Shown here piece by piece: positions 11,019 through 56,483 of a DNA stretch of 64,000 nt. The stretch covers positions 124,001 through 188,000 of IMG/VR virus record IMGVR_UViG_3300017763_000002; one strand, 5' to 3'. The notes under the pieces are model-generated. The model ran no database searches, had not been told where the DNA came from, and was given only the letters and a program-made list of their open reading frames with translations. Every line of letters begins with the position of its first letter. The first letter of the stretch is position 1. A program made the translations under genes and the position numbers.

Positions 11019-11058
11019 GCCTTGTTCCTTGACAAGGTATTACACGTATTTTATATAC

Positions 11059-12045
11059 TTAAACTCCAGAAAGCTTCATCATGTCCGCCATGCTTAATGA
11101 GCCACCCTTTTTCTTTGCTTCTTCGTGGAGATCAACTCCTCCCGCAGGCTTTTGTATTCCAAGGTATTCATAGTCTTCATCTTTAGCTCCGACTATGGTT
11201 GATCCATCGCTTTCTTCAAACTTAGATTTCATTTTTTCTTTTTCTTCAGTAGAAGTACTGCCATAATCTAACAGAGCCTGTGGATCTTTCTTGATCTTTT
11301 CTGGAATATTCTCGTTGCTTTCAAATATATTTTTAAATATTCTAGTATATACAATCATTCTAACTTGATTATATGTTAACACACAAAACGGCTTGCCATA
11401 AAATTGCATACTATCTTCAGCAAAATTTAAATACGGATGATAAAATTCTTCTAATATAAGATGCTGTATACTTTCTTCAGTAAAAGATGCAAATGTATCA
11501 TTATATAATTTAATTATTTTTGCTATTTTTTTAGCGTCTAATTCATCATACTCAGATTCAGTATATAATGGTTCTTTAAATTGATCATCTTTATAAAAAC
11601 TTTTTAATATATAAAAATCGTTTGTTCTTTGGGCTGCGTACTTTTCACATGTGTTGCCCATGAGGTTGTCTTTTTGTAATTTGAGAACCGCGAGCTTCTC
11701 TTTTTCTTCTTCAATGATTTTGTTTTGTTGATCTAACGCAGACTTTAATATAATTTTTTTCTTTGCGGTATTTAAGTTATCTAAAAAACTTTCTATTTTA
11801 GCTATCTTATCTTCATCCCTTTGAGTCCAGTCGCCCTCCTGTTCAAGAAAATCTAAAATCTCTTGATCAGTAGGTAGCCCTCGCTTCTTTGCTTTGGCTA
11901 CATAAAGATCAGTAATATCCTCTAGCTCCACTTGATCGTGCGGAGTCAGGTGTCTAATATATACAATACTTTCATTGTATATTTCTGAAGAGAAACCTCT
12001 TACAACATCCCTAAACGCCTTCCGGTGCTCAGTGGCGCTAGACAT
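11059..12045 (-). CDS. Hypothetical protein, probable tail assembly chaperone
   Basis: 328 aa acidic/helical ORF directly upstream of TMP; call from position only. Confidence 0.45.
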   Translation of the reverse strand: MSSATEHRKAFRDVVRGFSSEIYNESIVYIRHLTPHDQVELEDITDLYVAKAKKRGLPTDQEILDFLEQEGDWTQRDEDKIAKIESFLDNLNTAKKKIILKSALDQQNKIIEEEKEKLAVLKLQKDNLMGNTCEKYAAQRTNDFYILKSFYKDDQFKEPLYTESEYDELDAKKIAKIIKLYNDTFASFTEESIQHLILEEFYHPYLNFAEDSMQFYGKPFCVLTYNQVRMIVYTRIFKNIFESNENIPEKIKKDPQALLDYGSTSTEEKEKMKSKFEESDGSTIVGAKDEDYEYLGIQKPAGGVDLHEEAKKKGGSLSMADMMKLSGV

Positions 12046-12854
12046 TATACTTCTCCGTTGTCTATATCTTCTTGAAGTTTCTCAAAGTCCTCAGATAACA
12101 CAGCGCCTGCGCTATAGTACCAATAACTTACATAAGTCGTTAGCTTGTTAGAAATTGTATAATATATTTCGCTACCCTGTTCTTCTAGCCTGTAATATTC
12201 ATCAACTTTATCCTCAAAAGTCTCGCCTTTAAATATAGGTTCAGCTTCATCTTCTTCGTTCTTGCGAATATAAGATAGATTTAATAGATACCATGTGACA
12301 GCTTTGTTTGCCGCTCTAGAATCTGCTGTGTGATTAAACAATGACGCATAATTTGTTTCAACTGTGACAATATTTTTTCGTGTTTCTCCCAGCTTTGCGG
12401 ATAAATCTTTTATTTTATCCCTGTCTTTTTGTGTTCTAGAGGATTTTGTGTTTAGCCTACCGAGCTCAGTACTGTACTCTCCGAATTTCATATACAGTCT
12501 AGTTAACTCTTGAGCGTCTTCTTCTGGCATTAGCCCTCCGCTATCAGAGTATTTTTTAGCAAGCATAGCTTTCGTAAGAATTCCCTGCTTAACGCACTTA
12601 CTCATTTCTATACTATATTCAAGCTCAGCTTCTTCCATTTCCCTTCGGTTAGGCTGCTTGATAATAATTCTATATGGGACAGCTTGGTCGATTTCCTTAG
12701 TGACTTCCACTTCCTCCTCGCCGCCTTCTGTTTTTCTAAGTTCCTTTTCAGTTACCTTAACTTTTTCTGTTTGTTCCACGGTGAAACTATATACCTCTTT
12801 TAATTTATCGGCACTAACTTCCTCAGTGGGTTTTTCTTTTTCTAATAATTGCAT
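12045..12854 (-). CDS. Hypothetical protein, probable tail assembly chaperone
   Basis: 269 aa; TAATG overlap with next gene; call from position only. Confidence 0.45.
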   Translation of the reverse strand: MQLLEKEKPTEEVSADKLKEVYSFTVEQTEKVKVTEKELRKTEGGEEEVEVTKEIDQAVPYRIIIKQPNRREMEEAELEYSIEMSKCVKQGILTKAMLAKKYSDSGGLMPEEDAQELTRLYMKFGEYSTELGRLNTKSSRTQKDRDKIKDLSAKLGETRKNIVTVETNYASLFNHTADSRAANKAVTWYLLNLSYIRKNEEDEAEPIFKGETFEDKVDEYYRLEEQGSEIYYTISNKLTTYVSYWYYSAGAVLSEDFEKLQEDIDNGEV

Positions 12855-12878
12855 TCCTTGTTCCTTTCTTAATTATAT

Positions 12879-13166
12879 TTATTTAAATACAAAACCTATA
12901 GTAAAATTTTCTAGATCACCTTCAATATTCCTAATTGTTTCATTTCCAATGTCTAGTGTTCTTTTTCTTAGATGTTGTAATTTGTCTTGATCAAAATAAT
13001 CCGCTTGATCAATTAAACTTTTATATTCTTCTGGTAAATTTTGTTTTAATTTACTAAAATGAATTCTATGTTCTTCGTTTAAATCTTCTAACATCATTAG
13101 AAAGCCTTTAAACAAAGACTTCGTACTCCTCTCGCAATGACTGCGAAAAATATTTTCTGCTTCCAT
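12879..13166 (-). CDS. Hypothetical protein
   Basis: 95 aa ORF heading the leftward tail operon. Confidence 0.6.
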   Translation of the reverse strand: MEAENIFRSHCERSTKSLFKGFLMMLEDLNEEHRIHFSKLKQNLPEEYKSLIDQADYFDQDKLQHLRKRTLDIGNETIRNIEGDLENFTIGFVFK

Positions 13167-13219
13167 AACCTTATTCCTAATAGTTTATACACCTATTATT
13201 ATTTGGTGTAAAATAAAAT

Positions 13220-13678
13220 ATGGCAAGTTTTATTTCGGATCTAGCAAAAAAGGTTTTCGCTCAACAGTTCACCCATCTTCATGATACTTTCTCTAGAGAG
13301 ATCGTTGTATATAAAGAGGCGCAGAAAGTTGTAATCAATACAGATGTTAACTATAATTATATCTACAACAATACAGGAGCTGCGCCCAGCGTTCAAAATG
13401 TTCCGCAAAAATTTATATTTCAAGCTCGCATATTATATGACGACAATAGAGACACAGAATATTTCGGAGAGTTTGGTTCAAGCACTAAGATTAAAAGAGT
13501 TGACGGCAACAGTAGAGTGAGAATTAAATTAAAAAAAGATGATTACATGCAAATCAAAGATGTTAAAAGAATTGAATTTGATGAAAGAATGTTTATGGTC
13601 GATTCAGATCCAAGACCGCACGGATTATTTGAAATAGACTTTTATACATTATACCTCAAACCAGTTGAAGCAAAATGA
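13220..13678 (+). CDS. Putative head-closure/neck protein
   Basis: 152 aa beta-rich ORF, size and position typical of head-tail connector genes; GTGTA-N9 upstream. Confidence 0.45.
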   Translation: MASFISDLAKKVFAQQFTHLHDTFSREIVVYKEAQKVVINTDVNYNYIYNNTGAAPSVQNVPQKFIFQARILYDDNRDTEYFGEFGSSTKIKRVDGNSRVRIKLKKDDYMQIKDVKRIEFDERMFMVDSDPRPHGLFEIDFYTLYLKPVEAK

Positions 13679-55373: not shown

Positions 55374-55587
55374 AGAAGCTAAGCTTTATACTTTTCGAAT
55401 AAAATATAACGCTGGAGTGGGTCACGCAGCTCACGACTCGTACCATTATTTTCAAGCTACTAATGCGGATCAAGCTTTAAGTTTTCATTTTTCTATGATG
55501 GAAAGAAAGAGTCTAACAAGCCAAACTATCAGCGTAGAGAGAAAAGACCCTTATGCCAATCGTTGGGTTGAAGAAAAAGTGTATTAA
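55357..55587 (+). CDS. Hypothetical protein
   Basis: 76 aa. Confidence 0.55.
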   Translation: MTKKYEEAKLYTFRIKYNAGVGHAAHDSYHYFQATNADQALSFHFSMMERKSLTSQTISVERKDPYANRWVEEKVY

Positions 55588-55632
55588 ACATAATGAGTAC
55601 TAAAAAATACGGCGTGATTTTTGCCCCGACAA

Positions 55633-55708
55633 GCCACCTTAGCTCAGATGGTAGAGCACCTCACTTGTAATGAGGATGTCGTCAGTTCGATCCTGACAGG
55701 TGGCTCCA
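55633..55708 (+). tRNA. tRNA-Thr(TGT)
   Basis: Full cloverleaf: GCCACCT/AGGTGGC acceptor, CCTCA-CT TGT AA-TGAGG, GTCAG-TTCGATC-CTGAC, encoded CCA; 76 nt. Confidence 0.97.
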
Positions 55709-55732
55709 TTTTTAATTAGTGTAATATTTTAT

Positions 55733-56275
55733 ATGCGATTTCTATTGCTTTTTATCCTCCTGACTAACTTGTGTTTCGGAGCCAAACTTTTACAAATAAA
55801 AGATTTTCTGTGTGACTGCGACTATTGCTCTAATTACAAAACTGGAGAACCTTTTATGATTGGAGAATTTTTCATGTCGTGCGACAAATGGAGGAAAAGC
55901 ACAATTAAAACCATGGAATTAATGCGAAAAAGCGAAAAGCCAAAATTAATCGAAAGAAAAGAGATTCTACCAAACAGTTTTGAAGAAATTGAAATACCTA
56001 TAGCTAAAATTGTGAATGACAATCAGCCAAATATAGAAAAATATTATTGGCAAAAAGAAAACAACTCGTGGATATATATTAATCAAAAGCAGGAAGACTC
56101 GTGGATGTATAAAGAAAAATTGGGTTGGCTGTGGAGATTTGATGAAGACAGATTCTTATACTCAGATTATTATGGTTGGCTTTATAATTATTTATTTAAT
56201 AATAAAACATTTTATTATTGGTACGATAAAAAACAATGGTTTAAACCTAGCGAAATGCCAGAGAGCAAGCTATAA
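55733..56275 (+). CDS. Signal-peptide protein with Trp-rich module
   Basis: MRFLLLFILLTNLCFG signal-like start; WMYKEKLGWLWRF...YYGWLY; GTGTA-N9 upstream. Confidence 0.65.
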   Translation: MRFLLLFILLTNLCFGAKLLQIKDFLCDCDYCSNYKTGEPFMIGEFFMSCDKWRKSTIKTMELMRKSEKPKLIERKEILPNSFEEIEIPIAKIVNDNQPNIEKYYWQKENNSWIYINQKQEDSWMYKEKLGWLWRFDEDRFLYSDYYGWLYNYLFNNKTFYYWYDKKQWFKPSEMPESKL

Positions 56276-56461
56276 ACCTTTGCGTTTCTTTGCTAAAATT
56301 AATAATTTATTCTTGTCTTCATCATTCATTTTCATAAACTTTTTCTTAGATTCCATCCATGCAACTCGCAGTCTTATATGCGGGTTACAGATGAATTTCG
56401 TATCTTCAATTAACTTGATAGTTAGATAGTCAATTATAATTTCTTCATTACTTCGCTCCAT
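56270..56461 (-). CDS. Hypothetical protein
   Basis: 63 aa; GTGTA-N9 upstream on minus strand. Confidence 0.55.
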   Translation of the reverse strand: MERSNEEIIIDYLTIKLIEDTKFICNPHIRLRVAWMESKKKFMKMNDEDKNKLLILAKKRKGL

Positions 56462-56483
56462 AAATTATTTTACACAAATAATC

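What the first reader, a model, noticed from the sequence alone, without database searches (positions are those of the whole stretch)
11041..56475. GTGTA-N9 motif: candidate phage-specific promoter giving leaderless transcripts, also positioned on the tmRNA 5' end
Seen: GTGTA lies exactly 9 nt before the ATG at 13220(+), 18291(-), 35134(-), 35206(+), 49500(+), 52222(+), 55733(+) and 56461(-); 10 nt before 23126(+) and 45410(-); and 21-22 nt before 13166(-), 11018(-) and 30757(-). It also lies exactly 9 nt before the tmRNA 5' G (45762-45766, then 45776). It is not complementary to the anti-Shine-Dalgarno sequence. Divergent pairs occur at 13188-13210, 18301-18339 and 35144-35196. Inference: because a non-coding RNA shares the spacing, this is more likely a transcription start signal than a translation signal, probably a late promoter read by a phage sigma factor or RNA polymerase. 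It would explain why tail genes sit on both strands as separate units.
Basis: partly seen in the sequence, partly recalled or inferred. Interest (0 to 1): 0.72.

Follow-up and report, generated by a model that had tools for sequence, protein, structure and literature searches.

The report
Phage GTGTA promoter making leaderless transcripts
A five-base word, GTGTA, placed 9 bases before start codons (and before a tmRNA and a tRNA) in an uncultured 205-kb marine phage is very probably the core of its middle/late promoters, most likely read by a phage-encoded sigma factor, and it makes messenger RNAs that begin directly at the start codon.

Summary
In the 204,906-bp phage genome, GTGTA-N9-ATG (ORF of 60 aa or more) occurs 14 times against 0.34 expected. 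That is the strongest signal among all 5-mers at offsets 0-30. GTGTA is also the most depleted 5-mer overall, equally on both strands inside genes.

It behaves as a promoter, not a translation signal:
- It sits in pairs at 7 of 9 divergent junctions, plus the junction before the tmRNA.
- It lies upstream of Shine-Dalgarno sites in the N21-22 class.
- It precedes a tmRNA and a tRNA.
- It can abut a terminator.

It has no -35 element (consensus GTGTA-A-W-A). A second class, classical TTGAC-N17-TAnnnT promoters, drives the early genes, also with the ATG 6-7 nt after the -10 box. The phage therefore looks leaderless throughout.

The genome encodes two divergent sigma-70-family proteins and no recognisable RNA polymerase. 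One sigma (201 aa) sits behind a host-type promoter, as in 56 of 68 relatives. The motif and its spacing recur around sigma homologues in 71 related viral contigs.

Direct RNA evidence is thin: one 5' end, in two runs, 10 nt after an ATGTA variant. The closest analogue is the phiEco32 gp36 single-element promoter. I rate it a new variant of a known kind.

The parts
11041..11045 (-). GTGTA promoter core. Predicted +1 near 11031. A 13-nt leader with an AAGGA-type Shine-Dalgarno leads to ATG 11018 (2343-aa tape measure protein).
13188..13192 (-). GTGTA core of a divergent pair. Predicted +1 near 13178. A 12-nt leader with Shine-Dalgarno leads to ATG 13166 (95 aa).
13206..13210 (+). GTGTA core of a divergent pair. 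N9 then ATG 13220 (152 aa). Predicted leaderless.
15302..15306 (+). One-mismatch copy (ATGTA, context AATGTAATA). RNA contig 5' ends map at 15316, exactly N9+1. ATG 15331 starts a 551-aa probable tail tube protein, the best-covered gene in the RNA runs.
18301..18305 (-). GTGTA core of a divergent pair. N9 then ATG 18291 (418 aa). Predicted leaderless.
18335..18339 (+). GTGTA core of a divergent pair. Predicted +1 near 18349. A 21-nt leader leads to ATG 18370 (1575-aa tail fibre-like protein).
23111..23115 (+). GTGTA core. N10 then ATG 23126 (1832-aa tail fibre protein).
30780..30784 (-). GTGTA core. Predicted +1 near 30770. A 13-nt leader with Shine-Dalgarno leads to ATG 30757 (627-aa tail fibre/spike protein).
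35144..35148 (-). GTGTA core of a divergent pair. N9 then ATG 35134 (1443 aa).
35192..35196 (+). GTGTA core of a divergent pair. N9 then ATG 35206 (1114 aa).
45421..45425 (-). GTGTA core. N10 then ATG 45410 (102 aa). It points away from the tmRNA promoter.
45762..45766 (+). GTGTA core. N9 then G45776, the first base of the tmRNA. The motif overlaps the Val-stop codons of the upstream 97-aa ORF.
45776..46138 (+). tmRNA gene (tag peptide ending in ALAA, CCA end encoded).
49231..49235 (+). GTGTA core. Predicted +1 near 49245. A 9-nt leader leads to ATG 49254 (66 aa).
49486..49490 (+). GTGTA core. N9 then ATG 49500 (456-aa group-1 glycosyltransferase).
52208..52212 (+). GTGTA core. N9 then ATG 52222 (81 aa).
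55579..55583 (+). GTGTA core. Predicted +1 at 55593, 40 nt before tRNA-Thr.
55633..55708 (+). tRNA-Thr (anticodon TGT).
55719..55723 (+). GTGTA core. N9 then ATG 55733 (180 aa).
56471..56475 (-). GTGTA core. N9 then ATG 56461 (63 aa).
39475..39503 (+). Contrast class: sigma-70-type promoter (TTGACA-N17-TAAAGT), with ATG 39510 six nt after the -10 box.
45437..45465 (+). Sigma-70-type promoter, with ATG 45474 eight nt after the -10 box (97-aa ORF ending at 45767). It could also feed the tmRNA early in infection.
56484..56512 (+). Sigma-70-type promoter, with ATG 56520 seven nt after the -10 box (TnpB/Cas12f-like gene).
58797..58825 (+). Sigma-70-type promoter, with ATG 58832 six nt after the -10 box. 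A similar promoter lies at 60262-60290 before ATG 60297.

Best explanation
GTGTA (extended consensus GTGTA-A-W-A, with no -35 partner) is the single recognition element of the middle/late promoters of this uncultured marine jumbo phage.

Proposed sequence of events:
1. Host RNA polymerase with the host primary sigma first transcribes early genes from classical TTGAC-N17-TAnnnT promoters. One of these drives the operon that holds a 201-aa phage sigma-70-family protein.
2. A phage sigma then directs the host core enzyme to GTGTA. The 201-aa protein is the more likely reader; a 269-aa sigma is the alternative.
3. Transcription starts at the tenth base after the final A, which puts GTGTA at about -14 to -10.

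Where the ATG sits at that tenth base, the mRNA is leaderless and would be translated directly from its 5'-terminal AUG. In other units the start lies 9-21 nt upstream of the ATG; in the four units with 12-13-nt or 9-nt leaders (11018, 13166, 30757, 49254) a Shine-Dalgarno-type purine run lies in between, while the 21-nt leader before 18370 has no evident one. In two cases the transcript is a non-coding RNA: the tmRNA, whose primary 5' end would coincide with the mature end, and a tRNA-Thr precursor.

Shown: the motif, its spacing, its depletion, its placement at the heads of transcription units, the second promoter class, the sigma genes, and the recurrence in relatives.
Inferred: the start site, the polymerase, which sigma reads the motif, and the timing.
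For: 1. Position: GTGTA at N9 is the top 5-mer-by-offset signal in the genome (14 against 0.34 expected). About 38 of 107 copies lie within 30 nt upstream of a gene start, although 94% of the genome is coding.
2. DNA-level selection: GTGTA is the most depleted 5-mer (107 against 213; z = -7.3). Inside genes the counts are equal on sense (33) and antisense (38) strands.
3. Architecture:
- Correctly oriented GTGTA on both strands at 7 of 9 divergent junctions, plus the junction before the tmRNA, and none within 60 nt of 7 of 9 convergent junctions.
- In the 53-nt gap 13167-13219 the two copies are only 13 nt apart and there is no TTGAC.
- A terminator hairpin and T-run abut the motif at genome position 71976(-) and in at least eight relatives.
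- Shine-Dalgarno sequences lie between motif and ATG in the N20-22 class.
4. Non-coding targets: the tmRNA at N9 and a tRNA-Thr precursor. Three of five complete relatives also have GTGTA within 50 nt upstream of their tmRNA. In L084 and L085 the N9+1 base is the first base of a conserved 18-nt leader.
5. Internal calibration: 23 of 38 TTGACn-N16-18-TAnnnT sites have an ATG (ORF of 40 aa or more) 6-8 nt after the -10 box. This is the geometry validated experimentally for leaderless genes in Deinococcus (PMC12340547). Leaderless design is therefore general in this phage.
6. Only two motif families are enriched upstream of genes: cTTGAC and GTGTA.
7. Reader:
- Two sigma-family genes. An AlphaFold model of the 201-aa protein (pLDDT 82) has only sigma factors among its 50 best PDB matches.
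- No T7-like, Rpb1 or Rpb2 domains in the genome.
- The 201-aa sigma's operon has a sigma-70-type promoter in this genome, and 56 such promoter matches fall 500-1000 nt upstream of the homologue across 68 relatives.
- The 269-aa sigma lies about 1 kb downstream of a GTGTA here and in 3 of 5 relatives.
8. Conservation:
- In 71 viral contigs with sigma homologues of 30-42% identity, GTGTA at N9 is again the top signal (57 against 2.6), and N12 gives 40 against 2.6.
- Spacer sequences differ between orthologous sites while GTGTA and the spacing stay.
- Whole-genome counts of GTGTA-N9-ATG in complete relatives G002, G004 and G005 are 13, 15 and 16, against 2, 1 and 1 for the reversed-pattern control.
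9. RNA: two independent RNA runs have contig 5' ends, each with a snap-back joint, at 15316. That is exactly N9+1 after AATGTAATA, upstream of the tail-tube gene.
Against: - No transcript 5' end was mapped at a true GTGTA site. The RNA runs had no coverage at the two divergent pairs that were laid.
- The one mapped end follows a variant (ATGTA) that is not itself enriched at gene starts.
- Contig ends are only a proxy for RNA ends.
- Both sigmas score below the curated Pfam and NCBIfam cut-offs.
- The 201-aa sigma appears to have a region-4 helix-turn-helix, yet no -35 element is seen in 141 sites.
- Which sigma reads the motif is inferred from promoter logic only.
- With two sigmas one would expect a third promoter class, and none was found.
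- Two of five complete relatives (G001, G003) show little or no N9 enrichment although they carry both sigma homologues.
- A very divergent polymerase hidden in the giant ORFs cannot be excluded by Pfam searches.
Confidence: 0.72

Rival explanations
1. GTGTA is read by the host primary-sigma holoenzyme as an unusual -10-type or extended -10-type element. This could happen after a phage protein disables -35 recognition, as gp39 does in Thermus phage P23-45 or AsiA in T4. The phage sigma-like proteins would then do something else.
For: - The motif ends in TA followed by AT-rich sequence, like TAnnnT, and there is no -35.
- The phage clearly uses host holoenzyme for its TTGAC-type promoters.
Against: - The TA of GTGTA lies 9 nt from the ATG, whereas the TA of the genome's own sigma-70 -10 boxes lies 10-11 nt from it.
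- The base matching -7T is T in only 17 of 42 sites.
- The invariant G-T-G lies directly against the TA, without the one-base gap of a TGn extended -10.
- Two sigma genes are conserved in all five complete relatives, and one is placed behind an early-type promoter.
Confidence: 0.12
2. The 269-aa sigma (ECF-like, with regions 2 and 4), not the 201-aa one, is the reader of GTGTA. Alternatively the two act together or in succession on the same element.
For: - The 269-aa protein gives the better family scores (TIGR02937 41 bits, Sigma70_r2 and r4_2).
- It is better conserved among relatives (48-68% identity, against 31-35% for the 201-aa protein).
- No third motif class exists for it to read.
- Across the five complete relatives, N9 enrichment tracks 269-aa sigma identity only loosely: G005 has 68% identity and 16 sites, G001 has 48% and 6 mostly GC-rich hits.
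Against: Its gene lies in a GTGTA-headed unit here and in 3 of 5 relatives. It could therefore not switch the class on without read-through or the other sigma. ECF-type sigmas normally need a -35 element, and none is seen.
Confidence: 0.25
3. GTGTA acts on the RNA as a translation-initiation element that replaces the Shine-Dalgarno sequence.
For: Fixed spacing to the ATG and absence of a Shine-Dalgarno sequence in the N9-12 class.
Against: - It precedes a tmRNA and a tRNA.
- It lies upstream of an ordinary Shine-Dalgarno sequence in the N20-22 class.
- It can directly follow a terminator.
- It is depleted equally on the antisense strand of genes.
- It marks the first genes of units and divergent junctions rather than internal genes.
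- An RNA 5' end lies downstream of the variant copy.
Confidence: 0.03
4. A cryptic, highly diverged phage RNA polymerase reads GTGTA, as the AR9 non-virion enzyme reads AACA-N6-TA/G. It might be hidden in one of the giant ORFs.
For: - Short single-element motifs near -10 are typical of such enzymes (PMC5312081).
- The genome has ORFs of 5895 and 3418 aa with no assigned function.
- A DFDGD pentapeptide occurs in the 1575-aa protein.
Against: - No match to the Rpb1, Rpb2 or T7-type polymerase families, even at E = 1-10.
- The DFDGD lies in a protein with tail-fibre matches.
- Early genes plainly use host polymerase, and two sigma genes are present.
Confidence: 0.05

Closest known systems
Middle/late promoters of coliphage phiEco32 read by its sigma gp36
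   Same: - A single conserved element in the -10 region with no -35 element.
- Core AATGTA centred at -11.5, with starts 6-8 bp after the 9-mer tAATGTAtA (PMC8948821, PMC12276001). Here the core is GTGTA(ATA) at about -14 to -7, and the tail-tube copy reads AATGTAATA.
- A phage sigma used with the host core enzyme after an early phase run by host holoenzyme.
   Different: - The first base of the core is G, not A, and ATGTA is not enriched here.
- The final A sits at -10 rather than -9.
- The sigmas show no detectable sequence similarity to anything but generic sigma factors.
- The 201-aa protein seems to keep a region 4, which gp36 is said to lack.
- The genome is 205 kb, marine and unrelated.
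- Most units are leaderless.
T4 late promoters (TATAAATA) read by gp55 with gp33 and the sliding clamp
   Same: A small phage sigma-like protein, a single -10-region element without a -35, and a late-gene programme on host core polymerase (established knowledge).
   Different: The sequence is different. T4 late mRNAs have leaders with Shine-Dalgarno sites. No search for gp55, gp33 or a clamp-dependent system was made here.
Leaderless genes with a -10 box 6-7 bp before the start codon (Deinococcus-Thermus, Actinobacteria; Thermus phage P23-45)
   Same: The sigma-70-type promoters of this phage have exactly this geometry (PMC12340547). The GTGTA class applies the same principle with a different element. 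P23-45 middle and late promoters lack a -35 (PMC7403470). I recall that their transcripts are leaderless, but I could not check this.
   Different: Here a second, phage-specific element does the job. The host is unknown and is not evidently from those phyla.
AR9 / phiKZ non-virion RNA polymerase late promoters (AACA-N6-TA/G; TATG)
   Same: A very short motif near -10 at a fixed distance from the start (PMC5312081).
   Different: Those are read by phage multisubunit polymerases. No such genes are found here. AR9 leaders are 26-491 nt long.

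Membership tests
Sigma-70 family (201-aa protein, genome 92414-93019, minus strand) | Region 2 (core binding and -10 recognition) | tested here: met
   The Pfam Sigma70_r2 match is below the cut-off (16-18 bits). PHROG 'RNA polymerase sigma factor' scores 6.5e-7. A profile of 11 homologues aligns to SigA region 2. The AlphaFold model has pLDDT 82, and its 50 best Foldseek PDB matches are all sigma factors with probability 0.91-1.00.
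Sigma-70 family (201-aa protein) | Region 4 helix-turn-helix that reads a -35 element | tested here: inconclusive
   A conserved C-terminal segment aligns weakly to SigA region 4. No -35 element appears in 141 sites.
Sigma-70 family (269-aa protein, genome 41100-41909, plus strand) | Regions 2 and 4 | tested here: inconclusive
   Sigma70_r2 scores 23-25 bits (cut-off 24), r4_2 scores 21.9 (cut-off 25.7), and TIGR02937 scores 41.2 (cut-off 42.9). PHROG sigma factor scores 2.7e-7. No structure was predicted.
Sigma-70 family (both proteins) | Binds core RNA polymerase and confers promoter specificity | not testable with these tools
   Needs in vitro transcription or pull-down.
phiEco32 gp36-type single-element promoter | One conserved element in the -10 region and no -35 | tested here: met
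   Position-weight matrices of 42 and 141 sites.
phiEco32 gp36-type single-element promoter | Core sequence AATGTA | tested here: not met
   The core is GTGTA. ATGTA at N9-12 is at background level (7 of 543 copies). One ATGTA copy may be functional.
phiEco32 gp36-type single-element promoter | Sigma homologous to gp36 | tested here: inconclusive
   Sequence searches of PDB chains returned only SigA and FliA for the 201-aa profile and nothing relevant for the 269-aa protein. I did not have the gp36 sequence for a direct comparison.
Leaderless mRNA | Transcript 5' end coincides with the A of the start codon | not tested
   Inferred from geometry only. The single read-laying run had no coverage at N9 sites.
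Leaderless mRNA | AUG start and no Shine-Dalgarno sequence | tested here: met
   All 14 N9 sites with long ORFs start with ATG. The 9-nt spacers are A/T-rich and have no purine run.
tmRNA | tRNA-like ends, tag reading frame, match to the covariance model | tested here: met
   ARAGORN finds a tag ending in ALAA. Rfam RF00023 scores 139.8 bits over the full length.

The most novel reading that the evidence does not exclude
A whole lineage of marine jumbo phages expresses nearly every transcription unit as a leaderless RNA. The early units would use host sigma-70 promoters, and the middle and late units a phage-sigma-specific 5-8-bp element with no -35 partner. In this phage the same element would produce a tmRNA whose primary 5' end is already the mature end, so that it needs no RNase P cut. 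That would imply a host, possibly a marine verrucomicrobium, with efficient 70S-type initiation on 5'-terminal AUGs. It would also imply a minimal sigma whose region 4 serves only to dock on the polymerase.
Probability: 0.35. Interest if true: 0.7.

Novelty: new variant of a known kind. Interest (0 to 1): 0.58.

Why it matters
- It yields a nearly complete transcription map for an uncultured, unannotatable 205-kb phage: two promoter classes and about 40 + 40 unit starts. Most of its proteins match no known family.
- It corrects gene starts. Many ORFs are over-extended upstream of the N9 ATG.
- It gives a compact, testable pair of sigma and promoter (about 8 bp, no -35). Such a pair could serve as an orthogonal expression part.
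- It shows that the leaderless design known from Deinococcus-Thermus and Actinobacteria also organises a large marine phage lineage, which constrains the unknown host.
- It offers a natural case of a tmRNA and a tRNA placed under a phage-specific promoter.

Tried and rejected
- Megablast of 12 kb, and tblastn of the tail-tube protein and of the 201-aa sigma, against 50,697 phage records: no match. No cultured relative was found.
- The search for related loci with single proteins (the 1114-aa protein and the glycosyltransferase): no relatives. Only the sigma alignment worked.
- Pattern GTGTA-N9-tmRNA 5' end in viral contigs: no hit. The N9 placement on the tmRNA is not conserved.
- PHROG scan of ten large proteins around the sigma: almost nothing.
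- T7-type, Rpb2 and Rpb1 polymerase families: absent.
- A DxDGD regex found only calcium-binding-type repeats and one DFDGD in a tail-fibre-like protein. I did not pursue it.
- WhiB as a marker of actinobacterial phages: absent.
- A test for leaderless geometry in 22 Opitutales loci: uninformative, because of 66% GC and poor start calls.
- The other top 5-mer-by-offset signals were traced to a 54-bp in-gene tandem repeat.
- A search for a -35 element or a third promoter class: none. The weak upstream k-mers reflect orthologous coding sequence.
- The ATGTA variant as a general second core: rejected. Only 6 of 41 ATGTAAWA copies are intergenic, against 10 of 18 for GTGTAAWA.
- The look-up of encoding contigs for RNA-derived contigs of the tail-tube gene: only DNA records.
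- The paper on Thermus phage P23-45 (PMC3018760) could not be read.

Full report
**What the window is.** The window is bases 124001-188000 of a single 204,906-bp viral contig from a marine metagenome. CheckV rates the contig complete. Its GC content is 35.8%. It has no nucleotide or protein match among 50,697 deposited phage genomes. The left half of the window holds tail genes: a 2343-aa tape measure protein, tail fibres and a probable tail tube protein. The right half holds small genes, a glycosyltransferase, a tmRNA, a tRNA-Thr and a TnpB-like gene.

**Check of the observation.**
- N9 before the ATG at 13220, 18291, 35134, 35206, 49500, 52222, 55733 and 56461.
- N10 before the ATG at 23126 and 45410.
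- N21-22 before the ATG at 13166, 11018 and 30757.
- N9 before G45776, which ARAGORN and Rfam both give as base 1 of the tmRNA.

The signal is not chance.
- GTGTA is rare: 35 copies in the window against 78 in shuffles, and 107 in the genome against 213 expected from a maximal-order Markov model. That makes it the most depleted of all 5-mers (z = -7.3; the next is -4.4).
- GTGTA-N9-ATG followed by an ORF of at least 60 aa occurs 14 times against 0.34 expected. This is the highest-ranking 5-mer-by-offset combination in the genome.
- The other high-ranking words all come from a 54-bp tandem repeat inside one gene.
- No single-base variant of GTGTA behaves this way.
- About 38 of the 107 copies lie within 30 nt upstream of a gene start, although 94% of the genome is coding.

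**Promoter or translation signal.** Six independent features point to a DNA-level transcription signal.
1. Inside genes the word is equally rare on the sense (33) and antisense (38) strands. This fits avoidance of spurious promoters, not of an RNA element.
2. Seven of nine divergent gene junctions carry a correctly oriented copy on each strand, and so does the junction before the tmRNA. Seven of nine convergent junctions have none within 60 nt. In the 53-nt gap 13167-13219 the two copies are 13 nt apart and nothing resembling another promoter is present.
3. In the N20-22 class a normal Shine-Dalgarno sequence lies between the motif and the ATG. The predicted start 10 nt after the motif therefore gives a 12-13-nt leader that contains it.
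4. At genome position 71976(-), and in at least eight relatives, a GC-rich hairpin and T-run (an intrinsic terminator) ends directly at GTGTA, which is followed by N9-ATG.
5. The motif precedes two non-coding RNAs: the tmRNA (N9) and tRNA-Thr (predicted start 40 nt upstream).
6. Only two word families are enriched upstream of genes: cTTGAC and GTGTA.

**The second promoter class and the leaderless design.**
- The cTTGAC sites are classical TTGACn-N16-18-TAnnnT promoters. They are concentrated in the small-gene regions at genome positions 188-205 kb and 1-8 kb, and scattered elsewhere.
- In 23 of 38 such sites an ATG opening an ORF of at least 40 aa lies 6-8 nt after the -10 hexamer, with a sharp peak at 6-7.
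- This is the geometry shown experimentally to give leaderless mRNAs in Deinococcus (PMC12340547). The phage therefore uses leaderless units even where the polymerase and its start rule are known.
- That supports reading the ATG after GTGTA-N9 as position +1.
- The two classes differ in register. The TA of a -10 hexamer lies 10-11 nt from the ATG, while the TA of GTGTA lies 9 nt away. The base that would correspond to -7T is not conserved. GTGTA is therefore not simply a host -10 box.

**Anatomy of the element.** In 42 sites of this genome and 141 non-redundant sites including relatives, only GTGTA and the next three bases (A in 103 of 141, then T/A, then A in 85 of 141) carry information. The flanks are A/T-rich and there is no -35 element. 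With +1 at the tenth base after the final A, GTGTA occupies -14 to -10.

**RNA evidence.**
- I used it on 12700-18690 with four RNA runs.
- Coverage was sparse and absent at both divergent GTGTA pairs, so no true GTGTA site was tested.
- The best-covered gene, the probable tail tube gene at 15331-16986, has contig 5' ends at 15316 in two runs from different studies (X26 and X31). Each end has an opposite-strand snap-back joint at that base, and neither run has coverage upstream.
- The sequence there is AATGTAATA followed by six bases and then A15316, that is ATGTA-N9-+1.
- This is the predicted spacing at a one-mismatch copy. The support is real but limited, because ATGTA is not generally enriched and contig ends only approximate RNA ends.

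**Who reads it.**
- The genome has no match to T7-type, Rpb2 or Rpb1 polymerase families.
- It has two sigma-70-family genes outside the window.
- The first is a 269-aa protein at genome 41100-41909. It has region 2 and region 4 matches close to the curated cut-offs.
- The second is a 201-aa protein at genome 92414-93019. Its sequence matches are weak. Its AlphaFold model (pLDDT 82) has only sigma factors among its 50 best PDB matches.
- The operon holding the 201-aa gene starts at a sigma-70-type promoter (TTGACT-N17-TAGTAT, then seven bases, then the ATG at genome 93841).
- Across 68 related contigs, 56 promoter-like matches of that type fall 500-1000 nt upstream of the homologue, against 0-12 in every other 500-nt bin.
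- The 269-aa gene lies about 1 kb downstream of a GTGTA here and in three of five complete relatives.
- By the logic of phage sigma cascades, the early-expressed 201-aa protein is the better candidate reader. The role of the 269-aa protein is open, because no third motif class was found. This step is inference.

**Conservation.**
- An alignment of 201-aa sigma homologues retrieved 71 viral contigs with homologues of 30-42% identity. Many come from genomes of 140-205 kb.
- Pooled over these 20-kb loci, GTGTA at N9 is again the top signal (57 against 2.6 expected), followed by N12 (40 against 2.6).
- At orthologous genes, for example an ~861-aa protein beginning MATRNL, the spacer sequence varies while GTGTA and its distance are kept.
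- Whole-genome counts of GTGTA-N9-ATG in five complete relatives, with counts for the reversed control pattern in brackets, are 13 (2), 15 (1), 16 (1), 5 (4) and 6 (0). An N7 control pattern shows no such excess.
- The two relatives with little or no enrichment, G001 and G003, still carry both sigma homologues. The recognition rule or the spacing has probably drifted there.

**The tmRNA.**
- All five complete relatives encode a tmRNA.
- GTGTA lies 27 nt upstream in two of them. There the N9+1 base is the first base of a conserved 18-nt leader.
- In one relative GTGTA lies 49 nt upstream. One has none within 60 nt. One has a sigma-70-type promoter instead.
- The tmRNA is thus often under this promoter class. 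The coincidence of the predicted start with the mature 5' end is specific to this genome. It is a consequence of promoter placement, not evidence of a special processing signal.
- In this genome a sigma-70-type promoter at 45437-45465 could also feed the tmRNA by read-through from the 97-aa ORF.

**Comparison with known systems.**
- The nearest analogue is phiEco32. Its sigma gp36 directs E. coli core polymerase to middle and late promoters that have a single element, tAATGTAtA (AATGTA centred at -11.5), with starts 6-8 bp downstream and no -35 (PMC8948821, PMC12276001). The logic and even part of the sequence (TGTA) agree.
- The differences from phiEco32 are the leading base, the register (one base), the sigma (no detectable similarity, and an apparent region 4), the phage lineage and the leaderless layout.
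- T4 gp55 with TATAAATA, and the AR9 non-virion polymerase with AACA-N6-TA/G (PMC5312081), are looser analogues.
- I therefore file this as a new variant of a known kind: a phage-sigma-specific single-element promoter. I do not file it as a member of the gp36 system.

**Host.** The early promoters and the Shine-Dalgarno usage argue against a Bacteroidota-type transcription and translation system. A pattern made of the phage tmRNA's exact 5' and 3' ends matched 22 bacterial genomes, all Verrucomicrobiota and mostly Opitutales. This is a lead only.

**Limits.**
- There is no start-site mapping at a true GTGTA site.
- There is no biochemical link between either sigma and the motif.
- The gene calls are my own simple ones.
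- The relatives are not phylogenetically independent.

Noticed in passing
window 53646-53872 and 57781-58170: Two arrays of a ~69-nt tandem repeat (about 3 and 5-6 copies, same orientation, 63-84% identical) flank a 4.1-kb segment that holds small genes, tRNA-Thr and the TnpB-like gene. Each array is followed by a T-run and a TTGACT-type promoter (53875-53904 and 58221-58250). The second array begins within the last 30 nt of the TnpB-like ORF, which raises the question of a guide-RNA or transposon-end role.
   Followed up: partly
window 56520-57812 (+): TnpB/Cas12f-like protein (Pfam Cas12f1-like_TNB, 54.5 bits). Its likely start is the ATG at 56520, seven nt after a sigma-70-type -10 box, not the TTG at 56484.
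   Followed up: partly
L005-L044 and others, locus position about 12340-12400 (about 2.4 kb downstream of the 201-aa sigma homologue): In the N12-13 class of GTGTA sites the start codon sits in the loop of a hairpin whose arms co-vary between relatives (tttctg/cagaaa, cttctg/cagaag, ctcctg/caggag, cttcgt/acgaag). This suggests a conserved 5'-terminal RNA structure on that mRNA. The orthologous site in this genome (90584, minus strand) has no obvious hairpin.
   Followed up: no
window 18348-18380 (+): GTGTA at 18335 is followed after 8 nt by an ATG that opens a 10-codon mini-ORF. The mini-ORF overlaps, out of frame, the start of the 1575-aa tail-fibre-like gene. It may be a leaderless upstream ORF.
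   Followed up: no
window 22216-22230 (residue about 1283 of the 1575-aa protein 18370-23097): The pentapeptide DFDGD, identical to the catalytic motif of multisubunit RNA polymerases, occurs in a protein that otherwise matches tail-fibre families. No Rpb1 profile match. Probably coincidence.
   Followed up: partly
genome 18704-36391 (+) and 105540-115796 (-), outside the window: Giant ORFs of 5895 and 3418 aa with no function assigned here.
   Followed up: no
genome 72398-73175 (-), outside the window: About 15 tandem copies of a 54-bp (18-aa) repeat inside a 465-aa gene. This produced the spurious k-mer signals in the positional scan.
   Followed up: yes
genome 78945-81068 and 82380-86435 (+), outside the window: Two large proteins carry many DxDGD-type aspartate-rich repeats, like thrombospondin type-3 or other calcium-binding repeats.
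   Followed up: no
window 45776-46138: The exact 5' and 3' ends of the phage tmRNA are shared with 22 bacterial tmRNA genes, all from Verrucomicrobiota (mostly Opitutaceae/Opitutales). This is a possible clue to the host lineage or to the origin of the gene.
   Followed up: partly
window 13026-13103: Contigs of three RNA runs all break off at 13103 with unlike sequence beyond, and one skips 12868-13026. This is probably strain variation in the 95-aa gene region, not a transcript end.
   Followed up: no
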